Source: Amphiscolops sp. MND2022 (lineage: Eukaryota). Taken from it: DNA of 64,000 nt. The stretch spans positions 41,292,001 to 41,356,000 of the forward strand of contig OZ076409.1 of assembly GCA_964187785.1 (NCBI GenBank), in the 5' to 3' direction. Positions within the stretch are counted from its first letter, which is position 1. Every line of letters begins with the position of its first letter. Positions 25,161 through 55,740 of the stretch are shown one piece after another. The notes under the pieces are model-generated. The model was not told where the DNA came from. It ran no database searches and saw only the letters and a program-made list of their open reading frames with translations. The translations under genes and the position numbers were made by a program.

Positions 25161-25177
25161 AAACAACAAAAATCTTT

Positions 25178-25255
25178 TAGTTCCGCTCGAGATTCAAAAC
25201 CCACAACCAGATTCTAGGTTGCGAAGCAGGCAGCCTAACCACGAGGCTTGGCCGT
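25178..25255 (-). mobile_element. tRNA-derived SINE head
   Basis: The reverse complement has an A-box-like tggttagg and a B-box-like ggttttgaatctc. It does not form a complete cloverleaf. Confidence 0.5.
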
Positions 25256-30743: not shown

Positions 30744-30756
30744 CTTCAACAGCATC

Positions 30757-30804
30757 CTCACATCGGCTACTAGGTCGTAGTCATTGTCATCGTCGTCGTC
30801 GTCG

Positions 30805-30870
<66 letters not shown>

Positions 30871-32820: not shown

Positions 32821-33114
32821 ATGGATGAGTCAAACAAGGATATGTACACGGAATTATATTCAAAAACTTCAACCCTGGCTTGCTAGGCAAAGTGACGTCA
32901 GTCCCAGTGGCAAGAGTCCCGAAACTGTTTATAGATAGTGAGCAAATGCATAAAAAACTACAGCAAAAATTAAAAGGAACTATAAAAGGAGAAGAAGCCG
33001 AACACCGCCTGTACCGATTGTTTACAGAACACTCTGGTTCAAAAAATGAATTCCTCACAAAAGTTGAACTTTTTCAACAAGTTGTAGCCTTCTTGAAAGA
33101 TGTTTTCGATAAAC
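32821..33114 (+). CDS. 5' exon of the NERD-nuclease/helicase gene (apparent 1-nt frameshift near 32860)
   Basis: Open frame 32829-33119 gives FKNFNPGLLGKV..VPKLF..KGEEAEHRLYRLF, a NERD-type G..(A/G)E helix. ATG 32821 joins it if one T is added. Candidate donor |gttgat at 33115. Confidence 0.55.
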
Positions 33115-33271
33115 GTTGATTTTGTTTTTTTTATGCTGAATTCAATAGGCAGCAGTACTTTTTCCTATCAACACATGAATGTCTAAAAATTTACACGAAG
33201 TCTATTACGGTGCGTTTCGGTTTATTAGCGTGATTTATCGTTGTCCTTCAAGACAAAAAATCATCACATTG

Positions 33272-33350
33272 CGCATTTTGAAGACGTCCCCATCATTCGT
33301 CTCTAATGGCCGCCATTAGAGACGAATGATGGGGACGTCTTCAAAATGCG
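33272..33350. repeat. Perfect 79-bp palindrome (39-bp arms, 1-nt centre)
   Basis: cgcattttgaagacgtccccatcattcgtctctaatggc-c-gccattagagacgaatgatggggacgtcttcaaaatgcg. Confidence 0.95.
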
Positions 33351-33380
33351 GCGAGAATTTTGAATTGAGCGGATCTTGAA

Positions 33381-34293
33381 TTGCGAGAATTCGATCAGGA
33401 CTTTGAGAAGATCTTGGAAGATAAAGTTTTGTTGAGGACCCAAACTTGGTTAAATTGTCCAAGGTTTTCAGAATTTTGCAGAAATTTTGTTATTTGGGAA
33501 GGAATACATTCGTGGTCGGCAAAAGGGGCGTTCAAAGATGAACCTGGAGTAATAATTTTCCCAAACTTTGATGGTTCCCACATTTTCAAATCCAAAGCTG
33601 CTTCGGTTGAAATCGACATGGCTCTCATTCATCCAACGAAAGGGGTTTTCGTATTCAATGTGAAAAACGAAGGTAGTTCCAAACAAGTTGACCGTGCCAA
33701 ACAATTGGCAGGAGTCAGGAAAGATATCAAGAAACACACGAATTTCATTCGCTTGCTGATTAACTACAAATCCAAAGCCGATCTTCCAATACACTCAGTC
33801 ATTTGTGATTTCGCGAGCGAAAACTCCAAATTAACTGAATTGAAGAACGAAGATTCCAGCGAAAAGATTATCGTTTTTTCAAAAGAGGAGCTGAAAAAAA
33901 GTAATTTCGTCAAATTCTGGAGCTCTAAACTTGCAGAGATTGGATGCAAAGCGAAGCCCAATGAGGTTGATTTGGTAGTTGCTCGTATGATAGCTCTTGC
34001 TTCGATAGAAGGAGCGGACGTTTTAATAGGTGAGAAGATGAAAAGAGGTCTGCTTCAATCCGTCTCTAAGATGGAACGTTTACAAACTCAGATGGAACGA
34101 TACGACGACGAGGAACTCAAGCAAAAAATTCCCAAACTCTCTGAAAATAAACCTTTGCAAAAGCATACTGGTGAACGCTCGAAAAAGGTTTTCATTCTCT
34201 GGAGCGCAGACCAATTGGAGGTTATTGGAAGAATATATGAACAAATATATCCGGAAAACAGAACGACCAAAGGAGCACGAATTCTAATCAATG
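33381..34293 (+). CDS. Main exon: NERD-like PD-(D/E)xK nuclease domain, linker and first residue of Walker A
   Basis: 308-aa ORF with GVIIFPNFD..VEIDMALIHPTKGVFVFNVKN (NERD-like EiD...GifviEvK), ending RILING. The 5' boundary is uncertain (acceptor candidates 33369, 33471, 33481). Confidence 0.75.
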
Positions 34294-34703
34294 GCAGGGT
34301 TTCCTAGCATGTCAATGAAACAACTTGCACCTTAACGTTTGGAAATGCAATAAGGAGTGGGTGCTAGGGTTGACCTATCATGCAAATCATCATATGTTCC
34401 TATATGTGGAAAGTAGTTGCCATACAAAAAAAACATTCTTTGTTCATGTCATGACTAAACAGTTTTCCATGAATGATCATTGTATGACATGCATGTTTTC
34501 CATAAAAATTTTAGTACTACTGTGTTCATTTCTAGGAAACCTTTCGAATAGTAACAGTCATCAGGTGTCATATTCACCTCCAGTATAGTAGAAAGAATAG
34601 ATTTAGGATCTTTGCAAATCCCGCTACTCCATTTTAGCTGTTAAAATTGCCCTTTTTGAAAACAATTTTTTGATATTTAATTTCTATGGAATCCTAACTG
34701 CAG

Positions 34704-34934
34704 GCGGTAAAGGCACAGGAAAAACAATGTTGCTAGTTTTCCTCGCCAAAATGGCAACAATAATGCTGGAGTCGGAACACGAAGTAGCCGAAGAACTTCA
34801 ACAACCCAAGAAAGAAAAGAACAACAAAAAGATGTCGACTTTGGTGAGTCACGGTAATCTCAGCTGTCGGAGTTTGACCACTGCACTCGAGGAAGCTCTT
34901 AAGGGTATTGACGTCACTGTGGAGGATCTAAAAC
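34704..34934 (+). CDS. Exon with Walker A (GGKGTGKT) and helicase motif Ia
   Basis: Branch-like ctaac and cag| acceptor at 34703. Translates to (G)GKGTGKTMLL..GNLSCRSLTTALEE. Donor |gttagt at 34935, phase 1. Confidence 0.8.
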
Positions 34935-35259
34935 GTTAGTCCGATACACGCATTTCTCTATGTTAAAGTCATCTAAATCAATCTACAGGGGTGTCGTTTT
35001 TGTGAGAAAAAGGTTAGTTCCGAATGAAAACTTGAAAACTTTGAAAAAATTCAACGTTTTGTGTTAATTATCGACATTTCGTTGAAAAAACCTTATTGCT
35101 GTATACAAAGTATGCAATGTACTCAGATTGTTGTTTCACTCAGTTGGTACACATACCCTCAAAATCCCAAAAACCTACAAAACTGATCGAAACCATCCAA
35201 AGCTAAAAGTTTAGTTTTCTGAAAAGCTAAAAGTTTTCTGAATTCGTTAAAGAAGGAAT

Positions 35260-36320
35260 GCTACTAACTTTTGTGGATACTGTTGTTCTTAATTTCGGTG
35301 GATACTGATACCCACGAAAACAATCAACATGACCCCATTGATCATCACGAATCTTTCCGCTCGAACTATTTTAGCGACGACGCACGTTTACTGCTCGAGC
35401 GTAGCCAGTAAATTACGAGAAGAACTTAGAAAAAAACTTTGACAGGTCTTGGTTCATCTTGCCGTTCTTGAAAACCTATACTCCTTACTCAAGTGTATGA
35501 AAAGTATGCTAAAGCGGCAAGTGAGTATGCAAACTACAGCACCAATCTAACTGCCAAGTGGTTATATACAGTCCGCATAAAGCTTTGATTTGGTAGTGAT
35601 TACTAAAGCGAGCTTAATCTTTTATCCTACACAGAGGCTTGAGCTCTAACCACTACAATATGCTATTCAAACACTAAACTATGAAGCGAGCTTCATAAGT
35701 TATTCTACGCAGAGGCTTGAGCTCTAACCACTACAGTATGCTATTCAAACTGTTGCTTCATTTTTTGGATCATTCACACGTTTTTGAATAACTTGAAAAC
35801 TTTTGAAAAAGTGTGTTTGCTTTTGGAGTGACAACTGCAACACGCAGTCGTAATTGCGCTATAATCAACACCTGAAGCAACAACCAACCAGAAAGCAATA
35901 ACTAATGACGCATAAGAAAAGTGAGTACTCGCAAAGGATACGATCGAACTTCAGTAAGATTTTGGTTACCATACTGTGCGGATTCTATCAACATAAATAC
36001 TCTACAGGCTTCCAACGTTTTTCATTTTTTAAACAATTTCTTTTGACATAATCTCAATTCAACTCTTCAGACTCAAAGACTTCCCTTCATGGTGATCACC
36101 AGAGCTCAAACTACAACTAACGCCCAAGCCAAAAAAACCAACATGAAAGATTATAGCGATAAAGAAAGTGATATCAGTTTGCCCGAACTCAACTCACACA
36201 ATTTAATTGCTGGAAACAGTAGTCATCACTCTAATGAGTAGGAAAGAGATCATGAACTAACAAGCCTAGTTATAATATTGACAGAAAAGGTTGCCTCAAG
36301 TAAGAGGGAAGAGAATGACT
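35260..36320 (+). mobile_element. Gypsy-like LTR retrotransposon fragments (internally deleted), including a 2x ~77-bp tandem repeat at 35600-35755
   Basis: gaaagtgatatcagtttgcccgaactcaactcac matches the reverse complement of 55600-55680. The class is assigned from general resemblance only. Confidence 0.4.
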
Positions 36321-36808
36321 CTTGCTAGTGTGAAACGCTGAGTGTCTCTATCAACTTTTTGGGCTTTCACGCTTTCAAAACCTTCGGAAAAGTGCAGAAA
36401 GTGTTCGAAATTTATTTTTTCACTTGTAGGCGTTTTGATGATTAAATTTCCGATGAACTCTATGGATATTCATACCAACAACAATTGTTGATAGGAACTT
36501 GAAACCGTCGAAAACTTGCATTTTTAGTATTTCTCTTTGCTTTTTTTTGATGTTCGATGCTTTTTTCATGACAAAAACCGCTTTTTGGAAATAAAGAACT
36601 AAAAGGTGTGTAATTTTTCTTGTCGCTTGCAATTTGTGCCTGGGGACAACTGAAAATTCGAGAAGCTGATAAAGAGTCAGTGCGTGAAGATACAGTGAGA
36701 TAAATGTGTGGCGGATCACATCGCATCAAACAAGTGCAAGAGGGATCGCAGGACCCACATCGGACACACCAGTCAAAAGATACAGTCCTTTAAAACAAGA
36801 AAAATAGG

Positions 36809-37204
36809 CATTACGATACATATGCCGCAAAAGTGGAAATTATCATCAAGTGTACAATGTATTTTCCGTAAAACGAGAGCGAACCGTATTCTAGTCAAAC
36901 AGTGCATTGTGTTCATCGCGGATTGTGATGCACAGTGTAATCAGAGTTTCGGTACACACCGTGAGTAAAATTAACACCAAACGATGCTTTTATTCGTGTG
37001 TGAAGTGGAAACCAGTCTAAGTTTGTAATTGCAGAGAGTGTAAAGTCGTCATTTACTGTATTTGGATCACTACGCGTAACGCCAAATCACACAGTGTAAC
37101 GAGCAAAACACGTAACGCGTATTTAGAATAATAACGCATTTTCATTGACTGTTATTCGAACTAGCAAGATTTTGCTAGTTCGTTGCGGCATATGTATCGT
37201 AATG
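36809..37204. mobile_element. 396-bp MITE of the CATTA family, inserted in the 5' LTR
   Basis: Perfect 22-bp TIRs cattacgatacatatgccgcaa / ttgcggcatatgtatcgtaatg, 2-bp TSD GG, and a subterminal hairpin gaactagcaagattttgctagttc shared with 17821-46. Confidence 0.85.
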
Positions 37205-37419
37205 GGATTTGTTCAGGAACGGTTCACAGTACTAAGTAACGGATCAGCGCGGCGTAAAGCTTGTCAAGCCTCAGCGCAGGATAAGGGCAACCGGCCGTTA
37301 CTTTTGGTCCACCGACACGGACTGGAAGAAGACGAGGACGAAGACGACTCGTTCGTGGACAACTGAAGAAGATTGCCCTAGTAAAGTAAGTGTCTATCTC
37401 ACAGAGGAGCTTGTGCTAC

Positions 37420-37652
37420 TGTGTATCTTGGCGATGTGCCACTGTGTATCTGGGCGATTGCGCCACTCTGTCTTTTGGTGATTGTACCACAGCGTCTCTT
37501 GACGAGTGTGCCACTGTGTGTCTGGGCGATTGTGTCAGGGTGACTCTGGGAGTTTGGGCTATTGTGACTCTGGGAGTTTGGGCAATTGTGACTCTGGGAA
37601 AATGAGCTATTGTGACTCTGGGAGTTTGAGCTATTGTGTACTCTGGGAGTTG
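37420..37652 (+). repeat. Minisatellites in the Pao 5' leader (~30-bp gtgccactgtgtatctgggcgattg units; ~24-bp tgtgactctgggagtttgggctat units); second copy at 41018-41250
   Basis: Directly visible head-to-tail units without unique spacers. Confidence 0.9.
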
Positions 37653-40411
37653 GGCTTTAGCGGCACTCTGAAGGCATTTGTGCAACAATTCTAGTTTTGA
37701 GGAGATTTGTATACTTTGGAACGTATCTCTGATCGAAGCAAAGATTTGGTATAAACGTCATCAAATAAATCTACAAAGTATACAAAAGGGTTGAAATCAG
37801 AGGGACAAGATCCACCGAAACAATCAAGCTTGTCCAAAAATCAAATATATTTGACAGTGTTGAGTTGATTTTTCAAGAATTGGCCATTGATTACCGGATT
37901 GAGCAGTTGACACTTTGTATCTGAGAAATTGCAGAATTGGGGAAAAGTGACTAAGTCTACAAGAATTAATTGTGAAGTTCGAAAGCTCTCAGTGAAACAA
38001 AGAGTCACCTGATCAAATGAACGGCAGAAAGAAAGAAGGGCACGCATCCTCGAATGACAAATGTGTTTGATGAAAGAAACACAACGCAGAGCCAAGAACT
38101 GATGGAACTCAAAGCAAAAGGTTTGGAAATGCGTCAGATTGGTACTTGTGGAACCTCTATTGGAAACGTGTACCCATACATGTGAAGAAACTCCATACGT
38201 TGGTTAAAGACTTGGATGACAAGCTTGATGAGAAAGAAGATGTTGTGTCCAAAAGCAACCTGATTGATCGGATAGTTGATTATCGCAACAGAACACAAGC
38301 GTTGCTGTTTTGTGTCAACTTCATGTTGAGCCTTACGAAAGAAGAAACGCAAATACAGCTCAGTTGAAGTGTGACTGAATGGGAAGAATGCTCTGCAAAA
38401 CTGGAATCGAGTTGGGTATATTGGATCCCTGATGTGAGGCAAAGTTAAAGTGTCCAATTGACGGGACAAAAGCGTTGAAACTAAGCCAGATGACAAATGG
38501 TACGTCTACAGACGCAGCTATGAGATGCCCTCGCACAAGAAAGTTGATGCAAAGATGTGTCGATCAGACAAAACAAAATTGTATAAAGAACACGGCTAGT
38601 GAAAAGGAATAAAGACCAATGACCAAAACATTGCTGAGTCATGGGAGACAGCATTTCTGAAGTGGAAAACTCAGTCAACAATGTGACATCAATGCTCGAA
38701 AAAAAGGGTAATGTGTCTGACAAAAAAGTCCAGATACACAACAGAATAACTGTTAACTCGAAGGAGTCTAATGAAGAGCGATTGGTTCTTCTGGCGAAAA
38801 AGAAAGCGGATGATCAGAAATCGAATGACTTCGGAGACCAAAGAAGCGAGCCTGGATCATTACAAATAAAGAAACAGGGCAAGCATTCACAACTGGTTGA
38901 AACCAAAAGCAACAGAACCTGTGATTTCAAAAACTTCGAGTGCTAGACCAATTATTTACTTGAAAGTAAAAGCTCTGAAAGAGCAAGAAGAACTGCAAAG
39001 CCGACTGGAGGAGCTGAAGCGCGCAGCAACACAAAAAGAATAGCTGACTTGCATGCAGATCTTTTCCGCAAAGTTAGAACAGCTGAAATTGAAAGAAAAT
39101 TAGCGGAAGCATCAAGCAGTCAGGGGACTAGCTTTCGAAGTATCTCACCAGTTGACAGTTTCACGGAAGACTCAGGATGGATGGACAAGTCATAAACAGC
39201 CGAGAATGAGGCTAAGTCCATTATTGCACTATCAAAACATTCGACGCCAAAGAATTCAATGAAAAGTTTTCCTTGCCTAGGAGAGACTCGAAACTTCCAA
39301 CAAAAACCGTTGGGCAAGGTGATCGGAAAGACAGAACAAATGCTGATAACGGAGCATGCAGACAAGGAACAACATCTCAACCAAAAGTGAAAGTTACAAA
39401 CAAAGGATACTCGAAGCTCCTCACAGCGGAACGTATACAGAATTGGTCAGAAACAATCGTTGTAGAAATTGTCGGTAAGACTTCCATACCGAAACCCTCC
39501 TCGTGGATACCAATTGAGTTTTGGAAGAGATTAACTTGGTTATGAGTGAGCATTCGGTAGTGAAAACAGAGATGAACTTGAATTATACAATGATGGAAAC
39601 AAGGAAAGAGCATAGAAACTCAGCATTCGCATCTAGCAAGCAAACTTTGGAAGAATTGAGTGTGCAAATTGAACTGCTGCAAGAGATTGTCGAAGTTTCC
39701 ACCGCACTACAGCACGTAGAACAACCGAACCTGTTCCTATTGACACCGTTCTTTGCCGGTATTCTACTTCTTGAAGAAAGAAACAAATGTTTTGAATTGG
39801 ACAAAAGTTATGGTTTTGTGCATGAGCAACAATTTGCACTGGAAGACGATTGGAATGAAGGAGGCATGTATCAGAAGCTATTCCACGTTGCAATGAAACA
39901 TGAAACATTCGTGGATGGCAATGCAATACCAAAAGTGAATTACAAACCATGAATGAACAATTTGGAAAGGAGACTGATTTCGAATTCAAGGCAAGACTTG
40001 ATGAAGAAATTATTCCGAGTGATTTTACTGTATGGAACCATAGGACTGGTATTGGAAACTCTGGAATGAACGCAGTGGCACAGGCTAACGGACTTGATGA
40101 AATTCAATTTAGCAACGGCCGCCGCAAGCAACAGAGGAAAACACTTGGAAGAGTGAAACTAATTGGAAACTGGTACATAGAATGGAGGAAAACGCTCAGT
40201 TGAACGAGAATGCAACACAAGCTGACATATTTCGGCTAAGTGAGTTCACAGGCGAATCATCAGTGACCAGAACGCAAATGTGTTCTTCGAAAGTACCAAC
40301 AACAACACGTTGGAGCGACGGGCCTTGCAATCGGCCGGCCAGCTGCATCAATCAAGACCATGTGGACTCAGTAAGAGTCTTTTGGTAAATTGGAAGTTTC
40401 TGATGATAATT

Positions 40412-40802
40412 CGATACATATGCCGCAAAAGTGGAAATTATCATCAAGTGTACAATGTTTTTTCCGTAAAACGAGAGCGAACCGTATTCTAGTCAAACAG
40501 TGCATTGTGTTCATCGCGGATTGTGATGCGCAGTGTAATCAGAGTTTCGGTACACACCGTGAGTAAAATTAACACCAAACGATGCTTTTATTCGTGTGTG
40601 AAGTGGAAACCAGTCTAAGTTTGTAATTGCAGAGAGTGTAAAGTCGTCATTTACTGTATTTGGATCACTACGCGTAACGCCAAATCACACAGTGTAACGA
40701 GCAAAACACGTAACGCGTATTTAGAATAATAACGCATTTTCATTGACTGTTATTCGAACTAGCAAGATTTTGCTAGTTCGTTGCGGCATATGTATCGTAA
40801 TG
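40412..40802. mobile_element. Duplicated copy of the CATTA MITE, left TIR truncated by 5 bp
   Basis: Begins cgatacatatgccgcaa at the duplication junction. The right TIR is intact. Confidence 0.85.
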
Positions 40803-42068
40803 GGATTTGTTCAGGAACGGTTCACAGTACTAAGTAACGGATCAGCGCGGCGTAAAGCTTGTCAAGCCTCAGCGCAGGATAAGGGCAACCGGCCGTTACT
40901 TTTGGTCCACCGACACGGACTGGAAGAAGACGAGGACGAAGACGACTCGTTCGTGGACAACTGAAGAAGATTGCCCTAGTAAAGTAAGTGTCTATCTCAC
41001 AGAGGAGCTTGTGCTACTGTGTATCTTGGCGATGTGCCACTGTGTATCTGGGCGATTGCGCCACTCTGTCTTTTGGTGATTGTACCACAGCGTCTCTTGA
41101 CGAGTGTGCCACTGTGTGTCTGGGCGATTGTGTCAGGGTGACTCTGGGAGTTTGGGCTATTGTGACTCTGGGAGTTTGGGCAATTGTGACTCTGGGAAAA
41201 TGAGCTATTGTGACTCTGGGAGTTTGAGCTATTGTGTACTCTGGGAGTTGGGCTTTAGCGGCACTCTGAAGGCATTTGTGCAACAATTCTAGTTTTGAGG
41301 AGATTTGTATACTTTGGAACGTATCTCTGATCGAAGCAAAGATTTGGTATAAACGTCATCAAATAAATCTACAAAGTATAGAAAAGGGTTGAACGCAGAG
41401 GGACAAGATCCACCGAAACAATCAAGCTTGTCCAAAAATCAAATATATTTGACAGTGTTGAGTTGATTTTTCAAGAATTGGCCATTGATTACCGGATTGA
41501 GCAGTTGACACTTTGTATCTGAGAAATTGCAGAATTGGGGAAAAGTGACTAAGTCTACAAGAATTAATTGTGAAGTTCGAAAGCCCTCAGTGAAACAAAG
41601 AGTCACCTGATCAAATGAACGGCAGAAAGAAAGAAGGGCACGCATCCTCGAATGACAAATGTGTTTGATGAAAGAAACACAACGCAGAGCCAAGAACTGA
41701 TGGAACTCAAAGCAAAAGGTTTGGAAATGCGTCAGATTGGTACTTGTGGAACCTCTATTGAAAACGTGTACCCATACATGTGAAGAAACTCCATACGTTG
41801 GTTAAAGACTTGGATGACAAGCTTGATGAGAAAGAAGACGTTGTGTCCAAAAGCAACCTGATTGATCGGATAGTTGATTATCGCAACAGAACACAAGCGT
41901 TGCTGTTTTGTGTCAACTTCATGTTGAGCCTTACGAAAGAAGAAACGCAAATACAGCTCAGTTGAAGTGTGACTGAATGGGAAGAATGCTCTGCAAAACT
42001 GGAATCGAGTTGGGTATATTGGATCCCTGATGTGAGGCAAATGTTAAAGTGTCCAATTGACGGGACAA

Positions 42069-45000: not shown

Positions 45001-48000
45001 GAAGACTCAGGATGGATGGACAAGTCAGAAACAGCCGAGAATGGGGCTAAGTCCATTATTGCACTATCAAAACATTCGACGCCAAAGATTTCAGTGAAAA
45101 GTTCTCCTTGCCTAGGAGAGACTCGAAACTTCCAACAGAAACCGTTGGGCAAGGTGATCGGAAAGACAGAACAAAAGCTGATAACGGAGCATGCAGACAA
45201 GGAGCAACATCTCAACCAGACGTGAACGTTACAAACAAAGGATCCTCGAAGCTCCTCACAGCGGAATGTATACAGAATTAGTCGGAAAAAAATGGTTGTA
45301 GAAAGTTGTCGGTAAGACTTCCATACCGAAACCCTCCTCGTGGATACCAATTAAGTTTTGGAAGAGATTCACTTGGTTATGAGTGAACATTCGGTAGTGA
45401 AAACAGAGATGAACTTGAATTATACAATGATGGAAACAAGGAAAGAGCATAGAAACTCAGCATTCGCATCTAGCAAGCAAACTTTGGAAGAATTGAGTGT
45501 GCAAATTGAACTGCTGCAAGAGATTGTCGAAGTTTCCACCGCACTACAGCACGTAGAACAACCGAACCTGTTCCTATTGACACCGTTCTTTGCCGGTATT
45601 CTACTTCTTGAAGAAAGAAACAAATGTTTTGAATTGGAAAAAAGTTATGGTTTTGTGCATGAGCAACAATTTGCACTGGAAGACGATTGGAATGAAGGAG
45701 GCATGTATCAGAAGCTATTCCACGTTGCAATGAAACATGAAACATTCGTGGATGGCAATGCAATACCAAAAGTGAATTACAAACCATGAATGAACAATTT
45801 GGAAAGGAGACTGATTTCGAACTCAAGGCAAGACTTGATGAAGAAATTATTCCGAGTGATTTTACTGTATGGAACCATAGGACTGGTATTGGAAACTCTG
45901 GAATGAACGCAGTGGCACAGGCTAACGGACTTGATGAAATTCAATTGAGCAACGGCCACCGCAAGCAACAGAGGAAAACACTTGGAAGAGTGAAACTAAT
46001 TGGAAACTGGTACATAGAATGGAGGAAAACGCTCAGTTGAACGAGAATGCAACACAAGCTGACATATTTCGGCTAAGTGAGTTCACAGGCAAATCATCAG
46101 TGACCAGAACGCAAATGTGTTCTTCGAAAGTACCAACAACAACACGTTGGAGCGACGGGCCTTGCAATCGGCCGGCCAGCTGCATCAATCAAGACCATGT
46201 GGACTCAGTAAGAGTCTTTTGGTAAATTGGAAGTTTCTGATGATAACTCGGAACCTGAGAGAACCCCACATGCTAAGAAGTTGGGTTTTTGTGGTAAAAG
46301 ATGCTCGGTGACGCTCTACAAACACAAGCAAAAGCGACACTCCACAGCATTACGATTACTTGGAAAAAACACTGATGTAGCTACGGAAAACGACGTGTCT
46401 GTAAGCAAAGAGCAAAACGTACCACAGCGACTGAATTCAAAGCACAAATCTATTCCCATTGAATGCATAGAGAACACTGAAACTAAAAAGAAGGACTTCA
46501 GTTTCTGTAAGATTGGAAATTCTCTCAGGCGTTGAAACTAAGCCAGATGGCAAATGGTACGTCTACAGACGCAGCTATGAGATGCCCTCGCACAAGAAAT
46601 TTGATTCAAAGATGTGTCGATCAGACAAAACAAAATTGTATAAAGAACACGGCTAGTGAAAAGGAATCACTGACGCGGTCAATAAAGACCAATGACCAAA
46701 ACACCGCTGAGTCATGGGAGACAGCATATCTGAAGTGGAAAACTCAGTCAACGATGTGACGTCAATGCTCGAAAAAAGGGTAATGGGTCTGACAAAAAAT
46801 CCAGATACACAACAGAATAACTGTTAGCTCGAAGGAGTTTAATGGAGAGCGATTGGTTTTCTGGCAAAAAAGAAAGCGGATGATCAGAAATCGAATGACT
46901 TCGGAGACCAACAAAGCGAGCCTGGATCATTACAAATAAAGAAACAGGGCAAGCATTCACAACTGGTTGAAACCAAAAGCAACAGAACCTGTGATTTCAA
47001 AAACTTCGAGTGCTAGACCAATTATTTACTTGAAAGTAAAAGCTCTGAAAGAGCAAGAAGAACTGCAAAGCCGACTGGAGAAGCTGAAGCGCGCAGCAAC
47101 ACAAAGAGAAATAGCTGACTTGCATGCAGATCTTTTCCGCAAAGCTGGAACAGCTGAAATTGAAAGAAAATTAGCGGAAGCATCAAGCAGTCAGGGGACT
47201 AGCTTTCGAAGTATCTCACCAGTTGACAGTTTCACGGAAGACTCAGGATGGATGGACAAGTCAGAAACAGCCGAGAATGGGGCTAAGTCCATTATTGCAC
47301 TATCAAAACATTCGACGCCAAAGATTTCAGTGAAAAGTTCTCCTTGCCTAGGAGAGACTCGAAACTTCCAACAGAAACCGTTGGGCAAGGTGATCGGAAA
47401 GACAGAACAAAAGCTGATAACGGAGCATGCAGACAAGGAGCAACATCTCAACCAGAAGTGAAAGTTACAAACAAAGGATCCTCGAAGCTCCTCACAGCGG
47501 AATGTATACAGAATTGGTCAGAAACAATCGTTGTAGAAAGTTGTCGGTAAGACTTCCATACCGAAACCCTCCTCGTGGATACCAATTAAGTTTTGGAAGA
47601 GATTCACTTGGTTATGAGTGAGCATTCGGTAGTGAAAACAGAGATGAACTTGAATTATACAATGATGGAAACAAGGAAAGAGCATAGAAACTCAGCATTC
47701 GCATCTAGCAAGCAAACTTTGGAAGAATTGAGTGTGCAAATTGAACTGCTGCAAGAGATTGTCGAAGTTTTCACCGCAATACAGCACGTAGAACAACCGA
47801 ACCTGTTCCTATTGACACCGTTCTTTGCCGGTATTCTACTTCTTGAAGAAAGAAACAAATGTTTTGAATTGGACAAAAGTTATGGTTTTGTGCATGAGCA
47901 ACAATTTGCACTGGAAGACGATTGGAATGAAGGAGGCATGTATCAGAAGCTATTCCACGTTGCAATGAAACATGAAACATTCGTGGATGGCAATACCAAA

Positions 48001-49456
48001 AGTTAATTACAAACCATGAATGAACAATTTGGAAAGGAGACTGATTTCGAATTCAAGGCAAGACTTGATGAAGAAATTATTCCGAGTGCCACTGATTTTG
48101 CCCAGACCAAAATAACAAGTTAACCAATCATTCCGGTGACTGTGCTCACGACAGGGACCAAAATTAAAATTAGTTAGGCAACTATTAATGAGGGCTGCTT
48201 TGAAATTGTTTTGTTAAAATAGGAAACCTGTTGACAGATCAATCAATTGTACTAATTAGAAGCTACAAGGTATTTTATTTGCACGTAAATGCGTGGATGA
48301 AACACACGTGTTCACGTGTGCAACTTGCATTGCATGCAGTTAATACGTACTATGCACGGTAGAGCTCAGTAATGATAACTAATTATTTATTGAATCATTG
48401 TTTACTTTGACTGGTTTATGATGCTGTGGTATGAATTAGAATCAAAATGAACACTGAGTTTTGAATGCACATAAACATGGTGTAAGTTAGTCAAAACTTT
48501 GACCACATTCCACTTTTCGGAAGTATAGGAGTCCCTCAATTTGCAAAAAGTGGAAGTTAGTCAACGTTTTGACTGACTTACGAAAAAGAGTATTTTTGGA
48601 CTAACTTCCGCTTTTTTCTAATTACGTGTTTTGACTAACTTACACAATTTTCCATTACGCGCGTTGATTTTGCTACACCGTTGAAGCATAGACCGTCTTG
48701 ACTGACTTACGCCGAATGACCATTTTACCATTTTACTCAGATTACGCTGCTTGACTAAAGGCAGCTTACCGGTACGTGTATCGTAATGTGATTTTACTGT
48801 ATGGAACCATAGGACTGGTATTGGAAACTCTGGAATGAACGCAGTGGCACAGGCTAACGGACTTGATGAAATTCAATTGAGCAACAGCCACCGCAAGCAA
48901 CAGAGGAAAACACTTGGAAGAGTGAAACTAATTGGAAACTGGTACATAGAATGGAGGAAAACGCTCAGTTGAACGAGAATGCAACACAAGCTGACATATT
49001 TCGGCTAAGTGAGTTCACAGGCAAATCATCAGTGACCAGAACGCAAATGTGTTCTTCGAAAGTACCAACAACAACACGTTGGAGCGACGGGCCTTGCAAT
49101 CGGCCGGCCAGCTGCATCAATCAAGACCATGTGGACTCAGTAAGAGTCTTTTGGTAAATTGGAAGTTTCTGATGATAACTCGGAACCTGAGAGAACCCCA
49201 CATGCTAAGAAGTTGGGTTTTTGTGGTAAAAGATGCTCGGTGACGCTCTACAAACACAAGCAAAAGCGACACTCCACAGCATTACGATTACTTGGAAAAA
49301 ACACTGATGTAGCTACGGAAAACGACGTGTCTGTAAGCAAAGAGCAAAATGTACCACAGCGACTGAATTCAAAGCACAAATCTATTCCCATTGAATGCAT
49401 AGAGAACACTGAAACTAAAAAAAGGACTTCAGTTTCTGTAAGGTTGGAAATTCTCT
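42069..49456 (+). repeat. Tandem array, 3 x ~2.24 kb (42069-44289, 44290-46526, 46527-49456 including a 700-bp insertion)
   Basis: Offsets of 2235-2237 bp between matching ORFs (43121/45358/47593; 44295/46532). The junction ttctctc|aggcgttg is repeated. Confidence 0.95.
48089..48788. mobile_element. 700-bp right-end piece of the CATTA element inserted in the last array unit
   Basis: Near-identical to 29337-30032 and ends ...gtgtatcgtaatg. The empty site ccgagtgattttactg is seen in the other units. 2-bp TSD TG. No left TIR. Confidence 0.85.
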
Positions 49457-50060
49457 TTATTTATTGATTATGATCATGGATGATTCAACGCCCTTTCGAG
49501 AAGGCCGAACCCAAAACAGCATTATGGAAAGACTAGTGAACGAATTCTCTTCGACATATCTCCCCGTGGTCAGTCAACTTTGATGGTGAAATCTTTAGCA
49601 GAGCAAATCTTGGCAAACTGGCTGAAGATTTTCGACTTACCTGGAAATCTACAGTTCGGAATATGAAGTAATTATGGAAGCCGAAGTAACTGATTTGAAT
49701 CATTCTTGTATCATACCGTTTTAAGGTTCGAAAGGAAAGCAAATGATTGAATTCAATGAATGTTGGACGTCGATGATGAAGTTTACGATATTTGGGGAAA
49801 CTATGACTTCGAATGGAAAACCAGTTTTTTTGGAAATGATTGAATGTCTTATGTGAATCTGTGGAAAACAACCTTTTGGTCAGCGAGCTGGATTATGGTC
49901 AAGCAGAGAAAGAACATAGCAAACAACTGGCCAACATGACTAAGAAACTGGAGCTTTCGGATAGACAATGACAATTGATGACAAACTAAAAAGACCAGTA
50001 GTGCAACTGGGCACCCTTGTACCATGAAAGTGCTTTTCGGGAGAAACACAGGGCCGGCAA

Positions 50061-50369
50061 TGATGGCGCCAGTCAATTGCAAGACAAGAAACTGAGAAAT
50101 GAACGATTGAATAGCTCTAGTCAAGTTGGGTCTTAGGACCAAGAGACTATTTGATCAACTTCTCATTCTTCACAACTTTTCGCTAGAGTTAGAGCGACTA
50201 AGTAGCTAGTCTCATAGTTGGCGAGCCGGAGCGCGTGAAGATACAGTGAGAGAAGAGAAACAAGAACACCATGATTCGTTCAGTAACGGTCCACAGTACT
50301 AAGCAACGGATTAAAGCGGCGTAGAGCTTGTCAAGCCTCAGCGCAGGATAAGGGCAAGCAGCCGTTACA
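50061..50369 (+). mobile_element. 3' LTR of the Pao element (309 bp)
   Basis: TG..CA ends. The 3' half matches 37205-37301 and 36680-36700. Confidence 0.75.
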
Positions 50370-51569
50370 TACATGTTCTGTATACTTAAAAAGGAATAGG
50401 CGACATTTACTTCATTTAAATATACCTTTGAGCAACCTGACAATGATGGCATTTTCACTACTTAATTTATTTCTATATCAAATAATTTCGAAATATACTT
50501 CAAAAGTGATTTTTTAGATATATATTTGAAACGTAATCTATATTTACAACGGAATCTATTTCTTTTAATTTTATACATTTACAACGGAAATGACGGCCTT
50601 TTTGTCTTTGAATATACTTTTGAGCCACCTCACAATGGTAGCATTTTCACTACTTACAAAGTAAGGTAGTACCTTCTTTACAAATTAAAAAGCTTCCAAT
50701 AATACTCTAGATGTCATTTATACCATTTTAAACCATTTATACCATGGTTGAGTTTTATACCATTACTAGTTGAGCGCTCAACGGAAAATGAATGTAGTCA
50801 ACCTGATTCTACCGACTATAAACTAGTTAACTAGTCTCATATCTCAACAACTGTTCGCTGACAAGTCAATGCGAACAAGTAGCTGCTCTCGTTATTGGAG
50901 TGTCGGAGCGCCTTAAAATATAGAGCGAGATAATTAGGACAGATCTCAGAAGATCCTCTCTAGTGTCGAGCGGAATCACAGGAGATCTTAGGGGGTTGCA
51001 CCGGACCCGCTAACTTCAAGATGCAGTCCCTCACAAATACAAAAAAGGCATTACCGTTTAGTAATACTCTCTAAGACGCGAAGAAGGATTATCCAAAAAT
51101 TTTCAATCAAAAGCATCCTTAAAATTTTTTGTTTGTTTTGAACGCTTTAGTCTCCGTGTCCTCATCTCCAATTTTTAAACCAAGCGATTCGATTAACGTT
51201 ACTTAAAACTCCATTGGAGCAACATAAACTCACATGATCTGGGAAAGGTTCCTAGGCTGCGCACTCAGAAAGTTGTCATTAGATGGCTGCCCGGTACTGT
51301 AACTTGGAATGGAATGAGTTGAATCTCGCATTTTGATTGGCTGATCCAATGTGAAACTAGCACGCGAATTATTCTTGTTCAAATCCAGGACTCACTCCCA
51401 GGTTGCTACTACAGAGCCTCAGGCTTAGTTGTCTCACGGATCCCGTAATTTGATTTCAGAATGCCTATAAGCAGTCTAAAGCTGCTTGTCCGCGGTAGTT
51501 GGTTAGGTTGTCTTTTTTGTTGTTTTGTTGTTTTCGCCGTAGACGGCGCTCAGCCGGACGAGGCGTCTT

Positions 51570-51775
51570 TCATGTGATGACTTTGATGCTACTATTTAAA
51601 GTGCAATGTTGCAGTTGACAAAAGGGATAGCATTGAAGTGTATTACTAACAAGGTGCCGCTATTTTTCAGCACCGGGATAGTTGCCGCTAAAATTGGAAA
51701 GCATTAGCACGGGTTCGAACCCACGACCTCATATCTGCCATGCAGACACACTACTAACCGCTCCATGGTGACTAG
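51570..51775 (-). mobile_element. tRNA-derived SINE
   Basis: Reverse complement ctagtcaccatggagcggttag...gtcgtgggttcgaacccgtgctaatgc, with a B-box GGTTCGAACCC and an A-box-like segment. Confidence 0.6.
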
Positions 51776-51999
51776 ACTTTACTAAATAGAGGAATAAAGT
51801 GAACATTTGGCAGACTTTGTAAAAAAAAAACGCAACACAAATTATGAATTTCCTCCCCCATTAAATGTGGGCGGAAGATGATAATGTTTGATTACATTCC
51901 TCCCTCTTATCATTGTTAACCTTGTCTTTGAACCCAAACATTTTTGGTGATATATAATGTCATGTAAGTTGGAACCGGTATTCTAGACTGTGAGTACGA

Positions 52000-52900
52000 A
52001 GTGTTGAATTGTGTTACATGTAAATGATGACATATCGAGCATAAGCCGCCCGCACATTCCGATTACGACCACGTGAACAAATGTACGCGCGAAGCCTTTG
52101 ATGCTTTTAAATAATTTTTAAATGTTGACATTATGCACTTTTTAGTTTTGATGAGAGCCTATAATATCAGTATAGTGAAACATTGAAAGTCATCCTTCTT
52201 AGGGTAAATAAACAAGGGCTAACAAAAACTCGGACACAATTCGTTGAATGACAGTGGATGTTGAAAACTGTTCTTTGAAAGGTAAACTAGAAAAAAGACC
52301 AGGAAATTCAATATTATAATCCTGAACAATTCATTAAACAACGAAACAGAATGCTAAACCTAGATGATTTAGAGAGATGGACATTTTGTCCGATAACTAA
52401 AACAAGGACGTAATGCAGGGGAGATTAACTTCAACTCAATTCAAAGAGACCCGAAGAACATAATCAATGCACCAGTTAGCCAAGAGGACTCTGGGGCTAA
52501 TTTTAACCTTCAAGAAAATTCATCACAGGAGAATGAAATTGGGAACATGGAGAGTGAAATTATGAATTCAAGGTCTGATAGGCTGCTAGAGTCTATGGAA
52601 ATACTGTCTAATGAGATGAATCTGAGAATTGTCACAAGAAATAGATTCAATGGTCAGTATGATTCACGCTCAAATGAATAGAGCTATCATTTCTGCAATG
52701 AACGAGAGGGTTATTCCAGAGATACAAAAATTGCTAGTAATTGGTCTGTGAGAGAAAACGAAAATGAGACGGGTACTTCCACTGCGATTAGCCGGATGTG
52801 TCAAATGGCAATTTAACAAAGAAGAACTCTAGATCGACCTCTCACATAAGGAATGAGGCGGATCTGGGTCCTAACAGGGAGTTTTTGTCTGGGATCAGCG
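52000..52900 (+). mobile_element. Gypsy-like LTR/gag 5' remnant
   Basis: Decayed gag-like N-terminal frame resembling those at 36090-36300 and 55250-55740. No intact motif. Confidence 0.3.
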
Positions 52901-54180
52901 ACTGTCATAGCTGCGGGTTATGATATTGGGAGCAAAAAGATCATAAGCTGTAGTATTGAGGTTAACCTGGCAAAATTAAACAGGAGACCTGTTCGAACTA
53001 TTATTTATGCATGAAATACGATTACTTGATAATGCCTAATTAATAAAATGCTTTCCCAATTGAAGTATGTAGATTAAAAGATTAGGCTTTTGAAAGGAAC
53101 ATTTTTTGTGTGCTAGTCGTTCACTTAAAAACGTGTCCCCTATTGAAGGCGTTTTTATGTCTTGTCGAGGCGTCCTTTTGCGCTCTGATCAGTTGTTAAT
53201 TATCTTGCTGATAAGATGTGAACTTATTATTGTTTTAGCATCATTGTCAAATTTTCAGTTTTTTCCGATGACTCAAACGTTTCTTCGCTAAGCATTCTAC
53301 CGAAAAGTATATCTGTTCATACACGTACGCTTCGCCAACGCTAATTTCGGCACTTTCTAAAGATCTTGACTAGAGGAAAATACGGACTATTTTTTGTCGG
53401 TTGAACTAAAATAAAAACTACTTCTTTTTTCCGTGACCACTTTTCAGCTCGTTGCTGTAACGAGTTTCTTGTTAAATTTCATTTTTATTTTGTGTTGACG
53501 CAATTATTGAAATATTTCGCAGTAGTTCTTTATAGAAACCATACATGTTTACTTCGAGAAAAGAAATAGCTTCGAAGCAATACATCAGTGGAAGTAATTT
53601 AGCCCTGTTCAGCTAATCTGAAAATCGACTGCTGAATGACCTCCAAAATTGCGGATCGAAAACAACTCGTAACAAGTGCTTTGAAAAAAAAACAATATTG
53701 ACAAACTGCAGAATAATCAAATGGGGTCTTTTAGAAACAAACAAGGCGTTGAATAACAGAAAAATGTCAAAGACCGAAGTGCGGTCCTCAAGAAAAAGTC
53801 GACTAAGAATCGTGCAGTGCCGAAAACAACCCAAAGGGACACTTTAGTCTCATATTCGAAGATCGAAGACCATAGATTCGAAGATCAGGTATAATTATGA
53901 AGTACCCAAAGGGAGTACCCATTGGTGTTTTTGGGCACGCTTTAGATCTTACGCGTACAGAATGTAAAAAATACCATTGTTTGAGCTCAGTGTTTGTGAG
54001 CTGGAGAGTGCAACTAATTGCCGTTTAAGTCTGGCAAATTTTTAAAAATGAATTACGCCAACTACTAAAAATGCGGCTTTGTTAGTAGTTTTCCTTACCC
54101 ACATTGAACATAACGGAAAATAAAAATCGTATCATGTTACACCAGTTTTTTTAATATATATTTTTTCCTTGTTATTTCAG

Positions 54181-54749
54181 CTGCTGAGCTTCAACATCAA
54201 TTACAAAGCTTCAAGATGATACTATGCGACGAAGCCACGAACCGCGTAATTCGACTTTTGCTTGAGAATTTGAGAGAAGACCAACATTTGGTTCTGTTCA
54301 CCGCAGAAAAAGAAAGAAACGTGGACCAACAGTTTGAACAGTTCTTTCTCAAAACTTGCCTCCGATCCACTTCACAGTTGGCACGGTTCGCAAACACTTA
54401 CCATTTGAGACAGTTAGAAAGTTTCTCAGTACACATAGCTTTTCCATCCAAGACTTTTCACGGTGAACTACCGGAGATAAGGTGGGCAGATGAAAATTCA
54501 AATGAAAATGACTTCATGCAGAAAAGTATCGATGCAATTCTTGAATTTGCTGCCGACCCTATTTGGCTCAGGAATTCGAATCAGGATTTCCAATCAAGAT
54601 TTGATTTCGCTGTTGTGCCATTAATACCTAAAGATCTTCTCCAACGAATATTAGAAAAACTGCCTGCAGATCATTCATGTAGCGTTGACCAAGCCCTGGT
54701 TGAGAAAAAGGCTCTCGTTGCCATATTCTTTAAATATCTAGCAAAGTAA
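54181..54749 (+). CDS. Exon with Walker B (MILCDE) and further SF1 helicase motifs (Schlafen/DUF2075-like)
   Basis: Strong acceptor ttttttccttgttatttcag| at 54180. Phase 1 matches the 34934 donor (…EDLK-P-AELQHQLQSFKMILCDEA). Also LKTCLRSTSQLARFA (L..n.R..I type motif) and FHGELP. The 3' end is uncertain. Confidence 0.75.
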
Positions 54750-55249
54750 TTGAATTTCAGTTGAAAAGTTTTAAAATTTGTGAATCGTCGGGGATTTCCT
54801 GACAACTTTCCCAGCTTGATCATGGAAAAAAACATACAAAAAGCATTTGGTTCACACCAATTCCTAGATATGAAGATTTGGAGATAAATGTGGAGATTAT
54901 TTGGAACATTGGCCAATCAAAAACCCAACAATGCAAATCATACAACGAACATATTAAGGTCATTGTACCTTAAATATATCCTTCACATTGTGGTCGTTGC
55001 ATGGAACAAAAGCTATCCATACTATGGACGTAGATTACATATTTTTCATACAGGTCATTTTGTGATTAACTTAGGATAACGTAGTCAGTTATTGCTAATA
55101 TTGATTGGTTATTCCAGTTATTGGCTATTCTTCCACTCAAGTACCATTCGCTATCAAGGTGAGCAACTAATGGTATACGCCGTTTGTTGGCATCTGACCT
55201 TGATTTGACACTGTTTATTTTCGAACAAAGCACAAATTGTCCAAAAAGT

Positions 55250-55740
55250 GGATCTAACGAAAGAATTTAAGCTGAGTAGATAGTAATTTAGCGGCTCTAA
55301 GCGGTCTATGTAAATTGCGTATTGTACAAATGTATTTTGATAGTACTGCGACGACAAGGTATGGGATGCAGTCGTTGAATGCGAGTTTCATTGATTGATG
55401 GTCAGCTTTCAGTGTGTGGCCGTTGTCAGAATCACACAATGTGTCGTGGTAAACAACGTTTTGTGTGTTCGCTTCCCTGTTTGGAGGGGTATTTCGCTCA
55501 TTATTTGGGTTATTCTGGCTATTCATCTCTATAAATCTCTGGTCATTTCTGATCCTTTCATGATCTCACTCAAGATCTAACAAGTTCGCTCTTTCGACGT
55601 TGTTGAAGGCACTGCGTGAGTTTAATTCTGGGAAATTAGCTTCACTTTCGTTATCACTAATGTAGTCCAGACTTTTCGTTTCAGGTTGGTTACTTCTAGA
55701 CGTTTTTGATCTAGTTAATATCATAAAAAACGATTAATTG
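55250..55740 (-). mobile_element. Gypsy-like gag 5' remnant
   Basis: Reverse-complement similarity to 36140-36260, and ORF 55254-55526. Confidence 0.4.

What the first reader, a model, noticed from the sequence alone, without database searches (positions are those of the whole stretch)
32821..54749. Intron-containing animal gene fusing a NERD-like nuclease to a Schlafen-type SF1 helicase
Four exons can be joined by eye into NERD-like nuclease (KGEEAE..., EIDMALIHPTKGVFVFNVKN), then Walker A GGKGTGKT, motif Ia, Walker B ILCDE and CLRST. Splice phases match across 410-bp and 19.2-kb introns (seen). NERD plus SF1-helicase fusions are best known from bacteria. The nuclease-plus-helicase layout parallels animal Schlafen proteins and several bacterial anti-phage nuclease-helicase systems (established analogy). 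The inference is a lineage-specific nucleic-acid-sensing or antiviral effector, possibly of horizontal origin and later intronised. This is the best candidate here for an undescribed system. Nothing in the sequence demonstrates function.
Basis: partly seen in the sequence, partly recalled or inferred. Interest (0 to 1): 0.8.

Follow-up and report, generated by a model that had tools for sequence, protein, structure and literature searches.

The report
Acoel NERD-helicase gene, six exons
This is a real, intact animal gene, larger than first drawn, that joins a restriction-enzyme-like NERD domain to a compact Schlafen/UvrD-like helicase motor; it is one of at least 30 copies in this acoel-type genome and its function is untested.

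Summary

- **Gene model.** Homologues and paralogues give six coding exons and an intact 1164-aa frame. The true first exon is 10862-11021. The ATG at 32821 is out of frame. The stop at 54749 is intronic. The last exon (helicase motifs V and VI plus a helical tail) lies about 18.8 kb beyond the window.
- **N-terminal domain.** It passes Pfam NERD narrowly and has a restriction-endonuclease (PD-(D/E)XK) fold. The glutamate of the ExK motif is replaced by N or S across the whole family.
- **ATPase.** It is a compact SF1 core. Its best structural matches are bacterial NERD-UvrD/DUF2075 helicases (TM 0.74-0.77) and the Schlafen group III helicase domain (E about 1e-10). No Pfam helicase model is passed except Viral_helicase1, marginally.
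- **Family.** At least 32 paralogues sit in tandem clusters, with dN/dS 0.35-0.71. Sequence relatives carry names only from acoels. Structural cousins occur in molluscs and cnidarians.
- **Limits.** No RNA data were available, and one intron needs a GC donor.
- **Function.** A nucleic-acid surveillance or defence ATPase is an inference only.

First-stage readers of this scan noted the same family on three other pieces of this genome.

The parts
10862..11021 (+). Coding exon 0: ATG plus 53 codons and 1 nt. Encodes the conserved N-terminal segment (FYKELDEF...QYPKW). Donor G|GTTGAA, phase 1.
   Evidence: tblastn of paralogue exon A hits 10886-11035, E 6e-9. Sequence read. Paralogue L003 has the same exon (75% identity) only about 630 bp upstream of its exon 1. 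The joined frame matches P0003 residues 9-438.
11022..32886 (+). Intron 0, 21.9 kb, phase 1.
Evidence: Donor and acceptor printed.
32887..33036 (+). Coding exon 1. Encodes VTSVPVARVP... and the first NERD helix with G..GE (KGEEAEHRLYRLF). Donor G|GTTCAA, phase 1.
   Evidence: Aligns with the pXO1 NERD protein motif KGKAGE.
33037..33525 (+). Intron 1, 489 nt. Holds a near-perfect palindrome (about 33272-33351) with raised read depth.
   Evidence: The acceptor AG at 33524-25 is conserved in all 7 subfamily paralogues. The alternative AG at 33500-01 is followed by frame-breaking indels in L004 and L005. The alternative at 33536-37 is lost in L003.
33526..34293 (+). Coding exon 2. Encodes the NERD core (VEIDMALIHPTKGVFVFNVKN), an alpha/beta linker, and the ILWS helix leading into the ATPase. 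Ends ...ILIN G|.
   Evidence: Pfam NERD 23.6 bits against 22.1. dN/dS 0.35-0.55 against six paralogues.
34294..34703 (+). Intron 2, 410 nt, GC-AG (G|GCAGGG ... CTGCAG|G), phase 1.
   Evidence: The GC donor is conserved in L001, L002, L003 and L006. Paralogue L009 has a GT donor at the same codon position. L008 has no intron there. DNA contigs span 34107-34401 with no differing letters.
34704..34934 (+). Coding exon 3. Encodes Walker A (GGKGTGKT) and the first strand-helix units of RecA-like lobe 1. Donor C|GTTAGT, phase 1.
   Evidence: Walker A is invariant in family alignment A1.
34935..54180 (+). Intron 3, 19.2 kb. About 36.7-49.5 kb is filled with locally amplified 2.2-kb and 3.6-kb units of a dispersed repeat.
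   Evidence: Repeated ORFs. Local copies are 92-99% identical. More than 1,000 first-look candidates genome-wide, of which the 40 scored are 75-80% identical. No Pfam domain.
54181..54698 (+). Coding exon 4. Encodes Walker B (ILCDE), the motif IV-like LKTCLRSTSQLARF, and the start of lobe 2. Donor G|GTTGAG, phase 0.
   Evidence: Motif IV aligns with HelD L..TYRST..I..F. dN/dS 0.40-0.71.
54699..64000 (+). First 9.3 kb of intron 4. The intron continues about 9.5 kb past the window. The last coding exon is G000:C1:41365535-41367202 (L031:2036-3703). That exon holds motif V (TIEGFEFSKVLILL), motif VI (FTACTRACLKLLIV) and a helical tail of about 450 aa.
   Evidence: A profile of the family C-termini hits L025/L026 and the equivalent exon of four paralogues. 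Acceptor AACCAG|GGA. Pfam Viral_helicase1 22.5 bits against 21 on this exon. dN/dS 0.37-0.45.

Best explanation
The locus is an intact protein-coding gene of an acoel-type animal. It has six coding exons spanning about 64 kb: window 10862 to 54698, plus a last exon about 18.8 kb further on. It encodes 1164 aa.

The protein has four parts:
1. A short N-terminal segment that, among the sequence relatives found, occurs only in this family.
2. A NERD domain with a PD-(D/E)XK restriction-endonuclease fold. It keeps the helix glutamate, the aspartate of EID and the lysine, but has N in place of the ExK glutamate.
3. A compact SF1 ATPase/helicase core without the 1B/2B insertions. It has Walker A, Walker B (DE), motif IV (LRST), motif V (GFEF) and motif VI (TRA), but no GDxxQ motif III.
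4. A helical tail of about 450 aa.

It belongs to a fast-evolving family of at least 32 copies arranged in tandem clusters.

Most likely mechanism, all inferred:
- The SF1 core binds and moves along, or clamps, single-stranded nucleic acid using ATP.
- The NERD module, which sits directly before the motor as in bacterial NERD-UvrD/DUF2075 helicases, holds or cuts the strand. Cutting would be weak or non-canonical given the E-to-N change.
- The variable helical tail mediates partner or target recognition.
- I put about 0.4 on a role in surveillance of foreign or selfish nucleic acid.
For: Gene model:
- Exon phases match and the frame is intact.
- The spliced product aligns collinearly with full-length acoel proteins across all junctions, for example P0041 residues 3-673, E 3e-70.
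- The NERD exon and the Walker-B exon are paired on the same strand in more than a dozen paralogues.
- Distant paralogues encode the same protein in two exons.
- dN/dS is 0.35-0.71 with no stop codons.

Domains:
- Pfam NERD is passed by this gene, by paralogues and by P0023.
- Alignment to the pXO1 NERD protein shows QID...ETK against EID...NVK.
- The helicase model has pLDDT 76.5. It matches SLFN11 and SLFN14 at E 7.5e-11 to 1e-8. It matches SLFN13, 8, 11, 9 and 5 at E 2e-10 to 4e-9. It matches bacterial NERD-UvrD/DUF2075 Atlas clusters at TM 0.74-0.77 over residues 1-330.
- The family profile hits HelD at E 1.4e-4, aligning motifs IV to VI.
- Viral_helicase1 is passed on the last exon.

Family size and spread.
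Against: - No transcript evidence. Only DNA-type runs hold the locus.
- One intron needs a GC donor. Four of the five donors have T at +3, and the acceptors are weak.
- The exon 2 start is ambiguous among three in-phase AGs.
- The ExK glutamate is missing and motif III is absent, so neither nuclease nor unwinding activity can be assumed.
- No Pfam helicase family other than a marginal Viral_helicase1 reaches its cut-off.
- Nothing links the gene to infection or immunity except analogy and the pattern of gene-family expansion.
Confidence: 0.68

Rival explanations
1. The copy in this window is an unexpressed or decaying paralogue (a pseudogene in the making), even though the family as a whole is functional.
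For: - GC donor at intron 2.
- Very long repeat-filled introns of 21.9, 19.2 and 18.8 kb, against about 630 bp for intron 0 in paralogue L003.
- No RNA support.
Against: - All six exons are open, giving an 1164-aa frame.
- dN/dS is below 1 in every exon against every paralogue.
- The GC donor is shared by four paralogues that also keep open frames.
- All ATPase motifs are intact.
Confidence: 0.12
2. The family is a housekeeping DNA- or RNA-metabolism helicase set (repair, replication restart, RNA decay), not a defence or sensing effector.
For: The fold also matches UvrD, PcrA, Upf1, MOV10, RecD and HelD, all at probability 1.00. HelD and UvrD act on stalled polymerases and in repair (established knowledge).
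Against: - At least 32 divergent copies in tandem clusters, with dN/dS up to 0.7, is not the usual pattern for core repair factors.
- No sequence-level orthologue outside acoels.
- C-terminal modules vary within the family, including beta-helix and zf-MYND.
Confidence: 0.2
3. The gene is carried by, or derived from, a transposable element, which would explain the copy number.
For: There are many copies on at least 12 chromosomes and on unplaced scaffolds. Transposons are abundant in and around the locus.
Against: - Copies differ by 20-60% at the protein level, with purifying selection.
- Intron positions are shared while intron lengths vary from 0.3 to more than 30 kb.
- The arrangement is in local same-strand tandem arrays.
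- No transposase, reverse transcriptase, Rep or Pif1 signature was found.
- The dispersed repeat in intron 3 is unrelated to the coding exons.
Confidence: 0.04
4. One reading: a four-exon gene (32821-54749) giving a truncated NERD plus half-helicase protein, recently acquired from bacteria and then given introns.
For: The open frame does continue to a stop at 54749. The NERD-helicase order is typical of bacteria.
Against: - The ATG at 32821 is out of frame.
- Conservation stops at 54698 in all paralogues.
- A conserved exon carrying motifs V and VI follows in this gene and in four paralogues.
- An upstream exon is conserved.
- There are no close bacterial sequence relatives.
- The N-terminal extension is shared with other invertebrate proteins.
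Confidence: 0.03

Closest known systems
Bacterial NERD-UvrD-like / NERD-DUF2075 (PF08378 + PF00580/PF13361/PF09848) helicases, 600-720 aa, enriched in defence islands
   Same: - Same domain order: NERD directly before a compact SF1 core.
- Best whole-core shape matches, TM 0.74-0.77 over residues 1-330.
- The NERD module also matches these clusters.
- G..GE, (E/Q)ID, xK and KH motifs align with the founding pXO1 NERD protein.
- Weak PADLOC hit to the NERD-helicase associated with defence reverse transcriptases, E 9e-6.
   Different: - An animal gene with introns.
- An extra N-terminal segment of about 75 aa and a helical tail of about 450 aa.
- The ExK glutamate is replaced by N or S.
- No motif III.
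- The Pfam UvrD and DUF2075 models are not passed.
- No sequence-level bacterial relative.
Vertebrate Schlafen group III proteins (SLFN5, 11, 13, 14)
   Same: - The helicase domain is the best match among solved structures and reviewed UniProt (Swiss-Prot) models. E is 7.5e-11 to 4e-9 and TM by query 0.54-0.62, covering query residues 3-330 against SLFN residues about 576-897.
- Both are multi-copy, fast-evolving families.
   Different: - No Schlafen core RNase domain.
- The PF09848 score is below the cut-off: 17.1 against 24, with 3 of 12 members hitting.
- No sequence similarity to any SLFN chain in the PDB profile searches.
- A helical tail is present here.
HelD / DNA helicase IV (PDB 6wvk)
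   Same: Best sequence-profile match among solved structures, E 1.4e-4. Walker A and motifs IV, V and VI align.
   Different: HelD has large insertion domains that reach into RNA polymerase and has no NERD domain. The match is marginal.
Uncharacterised invertebrate proteins in AlphaFold DB and ESM Atlas clusters (Mollusca, Cnidaria; some named 'DNA helicase' or 'DNA2/NAM7 helicase domain-containing')
   Same: The whole N-terminal module (residues 14-334), including the part absent from bacterial NERD proteins, matches at E 2e-10 to 2e-6 and TM 0.45-0.61. The hits are 680-1225 aa long.
   Different: No detectable sequence similarity by phmmer. Their helicase parts and active-site residues were not examined here.

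Membership tests
NERD (PF08378) | Score above Pfam's gathering cut-off (22.1 bits) | tested here: met
   Exon 2 alone scores 23.6 bits. P0023 scores 25.6 bits over profile positions 1-109. Paralogues reach up to 32 bits.
NERD (PF08378) | PD-(D/E)XK restriction-endonuclease-like fold | tested here: met
   [not shown]
NERD (PF08378) | Catalytic D ... (D/E)xK triad | tested here: not met
   D of EID and K are kept, but the acidic residue is N here (FNVKN), and N or S in the family. The pXO1 NERD protein has ETK at that position.
SF1 helicases (UvrD/Rep-like) | Walker A (GxGKT) and Walker B (DE) | tested here: met
   GGKGTGKT at residue 360 and ILCDE at residue 450. Both are invariant in alignment A1.
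SF1 helicases (UvrD/Rep-like) | Motifs IV (YRS-like), V (G.EF) and VI (TRA arginine) | tested here: met
   CLRST at 496, EGFEFS at 642 and CTRAC at 671. These align to the HelD motifs. Viral_helicase1 profile positions 164-228 score 22.5 against a cut-off of 21.
SF1 helicases (UvrD/Rep-like) | Motif III (GDxxQ) coupling ATP hydrolysis to translocation | tested here: not met
   The family has H.C.FSS, and this gene has LVLFTAE, at that position.
SF1 helicases (UvrD/Rep-like) | Two RecA-like lobes (fold) | tested here: met
   Foldseek probability is 1.00 to UvrD, PcrA, Upf1, RecD and SLFN11. TM is 0.74-0.77 to bacterial UvrD-like clusters.
SF1 helicases (UvrD/Rep-like) | Pfam UvrD-helicase, UvrD_C or AAA_19 above cut-off | tested here: not met
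   Only sub-threshold hits. UvrD_C_2 is hit by 9 of 12 members, best E 5e-4.
Schlafen group III | N-terminal Schlafen core (RNase) domain | tested here: not met
   No Pfam hit of that kind appeared in any member. The N-terminus is NERD.
Schlafen group III | SLFN-g3_helicase (PF09848) above cut-off (24 bits) | tested here: not met
   Best score is 17.1 bits, E 0.0036, with 3 of 12 members hitting.
Schlafen group III | Helicase-domain fold, with a globular alpha/beta domain packed just before it | tested here: met
   [not shown]
Known anti-phage defence proteins (PADLOC) | Significant match to a defence-system model | tested here: inconclusive
   P0003 matches RTasNERD-Hel at E 9e-6 on the NERD part only. 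P0040 matches AbiO at E 1.7e-6. This gene's own exon 2 and last exon gave no hit better than E 0.03.
Any helicase | ATP-dependent strand separation or translocation | not testable with these tools
   Needs purified protein.

The most novel reading that the evidence does not exclude
The animal NERD-helicases seen here (acoels, with structural cousins in molluscs and cnidarians) would be eukaryotic descendants of bacterial NERD-DUF2075/UvrD defence helicases. The 'linker domain of unknown function' plus helicase of vertebrate group III Schlafens would be the same two-domain module with a degenerate NERD. The acoel family would then be a Schlafen-less sister of the Schlafen C-terminal half, used as a diversified nucleic-acid sensor or effector.
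Probability: 0.25. Interest if true: 0.7.

Novelty: new variant of a known kind. Interest (0 to 1): 0.5.

Why it matters
- NERD-SF1 helicase fusions are common in bacterial defence islands but have not been described in animals, in the literature I could search.
- An expanded, selected family in acoels gives a tractable set of candidates for testing whether this prokaryotic module works in animal nucleic-acid surveillance. Acoels may be the sister group of all other bilaterians. Structural cousins in molluscs and cnidarians widen the set.
- The collinear match of the NERD module and the motor to the Schlafen linker and helicase suggests an origin for the Schlafen linker domain. The SLFN5 structure paper still calls that domain 'of unknown function' (PMC8789055).
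- For genome annotation, the case shows how repeat-swollen introns of about 20 kb split such genes. A window-limited reading then truncates them.

Tried and rejected
- **RNA evidence.** Two run searches found only DNA-type runs of one study. Laying their contigs showed no joints. That call confirmed only the genomic letters, including the GC donor.
- **Transcript check on a relative.** The contig carrying P0040 has no poly(A) tail and looks genomic, so it is not a transcript.
- **Profile search with a full-length alignment** in the word-indexed protein collection returned only 6 acoel-type proteins. It could not reach mollusc, cnidarian or bacterial relatives.
- **The genome search 'relatives'** is not available for this genome.
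- **Profile of the N-terminal module against PDB sequences** gave only a marginal SPT16 hit (E 0.006) on the linker. I regard it as chance.
- **C-terminal tail.** No Pfam domain was found. Atlas feature scores were 0.78 or lower, pointing to TPR-like clusters. These are below the level the tool treats as meaningful.
- **Alternative exon 2 acceptors** at 33502 and 33538 were considered and ranked below 33526.
- **Target-site-duplication reading of the 410-bp intron.** The direct repeat GCAGG at its two ends has a spacing of 406 nt, which would break the frame. I rejected this by reading the sequence.
- **Not attempted.** Complex prediction was not used, because no binding claim is made. The spliced protein itself could not be folded, because it has no reference. 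Close homologues were folded instead.

Full report
**What is in the sequence.**
- 32880-33119 (KGEEAEHRLYRLF)
- 33381-34307 (VEIDMALIHPTKGVFVFNVKN)
- 34670-34939 (GGKGTGKT)
- 54216-54749 (ILCDE ... CLRST)

Exon 2 alone passes Pfam NERD narrowly, 23.6 bits against a cut-off of 22.1. The junctions 34293/34704 and 34934/54181 are both phase 1 and give ...ILIN-G-GKGTGKT and ...DLK-P-AELQ....

The window is G000:C1:41292001-41356000 of a 1.07-Gb genome. The only named sequence relatives are 'uncharacterized protein' models of the acoels Convolutriloba macropyga and Symsagittifera roscoffensis.

- **Start.** The ATG at 32821 is in another frame and stops at 32884-86. A paralogue's N-terminus hits window 10886-11035. 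Reading that stretch gives ATG at 10862, 53 codons and a phase-1 donor G|GTTGAA. It joins the acceptor TTGCTAG|GC at 32887 to give ...YPKWRNQ-G-KVTSVPVARV, as in the 54%-identical relative P0003. In the paralogue L003 the same exon (75% identity) lies only about 630 bp upstream of exon 1.
- **Exon 1/2 join.** Exon 1 ends at 33036 (G|GTTCAA). Three in-phase acceptors are possible for exon 2. The AG at 33524-25 is the only one conserved in all seven subfamily paralogues without frame-breaking indels after it.
- **Intron 2.** It uses a GC donor (G|GCAGGG). Four paralogues share it. A more distant paralogue has GT at the same codon position, and another has no intron there. DNA contigs confirm the letters.
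- **End.** All six subfamily copies keep CTGGTTGAGAAAAA and then diverge, one pair with a 1-nt indel. So the exon ends at 54698 with donor G|GTTGAG.
- **Last exon.** A profile of the family C-termini finds a conserved 555-codon exon at G000:C1:41365535-41367202, about 18.8 kb downstream and outside the window. The equivalent exon follows in four paralogues.
- **Result.** Joined, the six exons give an open frame of 1164 aa. It aligns collinearly with full-length acoel proteins through every junction, for example P0041 residues 3-673, E 3e-70.

**Is it a working gene?**
Pairwise dN/dS against six subfamily paralogues is 0.35-0.71 in every exon, with no stop codons. This indicates purifying selection on a fast-evolving family.

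No RNA run holds the locus. The four runs that do are DNA-like contigs of one sample and show no joints. Splicing is therefore inferred from homology and reading phase only.

Intron 3 (19.2 kb) is filled with copies of a 2.2-kb dispersed repeat. The local copies are 92-99% identical. The first look found more than 1,000 candidates genome-wide, and the 40 scored are 75-80% identical. The repeat has no Pfam domain.

**The family.**
- The NERD exon has at least 32 matches in this genome and the Walker-B exon at least 27. They are paired on the same strand 3-50 kb apart, on at least 12 chromosomes, often in tandem clusters. There are three copies on C1 at 41.3-41.5 Mb.
- Distant paralogues encode the same protein in two exons: about 420 aa with the N-terminus, NERD and Walker A, then about 810-860 aa with Walker B, motifs IV to VI and the tail.
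- A phmmer scan of 1.84 billion representative proteins found only 72 hits. Every named one is from an acoel.
- Some members carry a beta-helix and a zf-MYND domain at the C-terminus.
- First-stage readers noted the same family on three other pieces of this genome.

**The N-terminal module.**
A model of P0003:1-335, built with 25 family sequences, has pLDDT 86.3.
- Aligned with the founding NERD protein of pXO1, the family keeps G..GE, the D of (Q/E)ID, the K and a KH motif. It has N (or S in some members) where pXO1 has the E of ETK. Canonical two-acid metal binding is therefore not conserved.
- From memory, Cfr10I has S-V-K with the acid supplied from elsewhere, so activity cannot be excluded.
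- In AlphaFold DB clusters the whole module (residues 14-334) best matches 680-1225-aa proteins, some named 'DNA helicase' or 'DNA2/NAM7 helicase domain-containing', at E 2e-10 to 2e-6. Bacterial NERD proteins follow, and they match only from about residue 75.
- The ESM Atlas gives eukaryotic clusters (Mollusca, Cnidaria) and bacterial NERD+AAA_19/ResIII, NERD+PF09848 and NERD+UvrD_C_2 clusters.

**The ATPase.**
- *Motifs.* The core is about 330 aa. It has Walker A, Walker B (DE), L..SLRST..I..F, G.EF..V and TRA, but no GDxxQ.
- *Sequence matches.* No Pfam helicase model is passed by family members. The last exon of this gene passes Viral_helicase1 narrowly, 22.5 against 21. The family profile hits HelD (6wvk) at E 1.4e-4, aligning motifs IV to VI.
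- *Structure, solved and reviewed entries.* A model of P0023:325-654 has pLDDT 76.5. It matches SLFN11 and SLFN14 first among solved structures, at E 7.5e-11 to 1e-8. Upf1, UvrD, the tomato mosaic virus helicase and RecD follow. It matches SLFN13, 8, 11, 9 and 5 first among reviewed UniProt (Swiss-Prot) models, with query 3-330 against SLFN about 576-897.
- *Structure, ESM Atlas.* The closest shapes are bacterial compact UvrD-like helicases, many with NERD or DUF2075 annotations, at TM 0.74-0.77 over the whole core.

'Schlafen-type SF1' is therefore a fair structural description. The family is not a Schlafen, because it has no Schlafen core domain and PF09848 is below its cut-off. Its nearest whole-architecture relatives are the bacterial NERD-helicases.

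**A side observation bearing on the Schlafen parallel.**

**Mechanism (inferred).**
- The intact nucleotide-binding and arginine motifs argue for an ATPase that binds single-stranded nucleic acid.
- The missing motif III and the compact core argue for a translocase or switch rather than a processive unwinder. This resembles the situation in SLFN5, where no ATP hydrolysis was observed (PMC8789055).
- The NERD domain, placed as in bacterial NERD-helicases, would hold or nick the substrate. A recent preprint models the bacterial NERD domain as threading ssDNA into the helicase (10.64898/2026.09.30.754977).
- The divergent helical tail and the tandem expansion fit a recognition or effector role in conflict with viruses or transposons. 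I give this about 0.4. A repair or RNA-metabolism role and a decaying copy are the main rivals.

**Novelty.**
I found no paper describing animal NERD-helicases. The architecture itself is well known in bacteria. I therefore class this as a new variant of a known kind: moderately interesting as a family, ordinary as a single locus.

Noticed in passing
window 36700-49500 (intron 3): Locally amplified array of a dispersed repeat: 2.2-kb units at about 38472-40413, 42069-44694, 44700-46930, 46936-48088 and 48788-49456, plus a 3.6-kb duplication (identical ORFs at 37145 and 40743). Local copies are 92-99% identical. The first look found more than 1,000 candidates genome-wide, and the 40 scored are 75-80% identical. 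The region has strong A-over-T skew, long + strand ORFs and no Pfam domain. Another copy sits inside the intron of a paralogue on C12 (11568575-11570828).
   Followed up: partly
window about 33272-33351 (intron 1): Near-perfect palindrome with arms of about 37 nt and a 3-nt loop. Contig depth is raised about threefold over its neighbours, so it is probably a small repeated element (MITE-like).
   Followed up: no
window 11022, 33037, 34935, 54699 (donor sites): Four of the five donors of this gene read GTT (GTTGAA, GTTCAA, GTTAGT, GTTGAG) and the fifth is GC. T at +3 is unusual against the common GTRAGT consensus. It may reflect this genome's splice-site usage.
   Followed up: no
[not shown]
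   Followed up: partly
If so, it explains much of the 21.9-kb first intron. Paralogue L003 has about 630 bp there.
   Followed up: no
window 30774-30871: (GTC)n microsatellite, 32.7 copies, 87% matches.
   Followed up: no
L022 = G000:C7:14263000-14272900: Two NERD exons lie head to tail on the minus strand (L022 6392-7402 and 7795-8862) upstream of one long helicase exon whose product has an acidic EKVA-repeat insert. This is either a tandem duplicate or a two-NERD gene.
   Followed up: no
P0042, P0051 (family members of other acoels): Some family members replace or extend the helical tail with a right-handed beta-helix (PF13229, E 1e-18) and a zf-MYND finger. The C-terminal module is therefore swapped within the family.
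   Followed up: no
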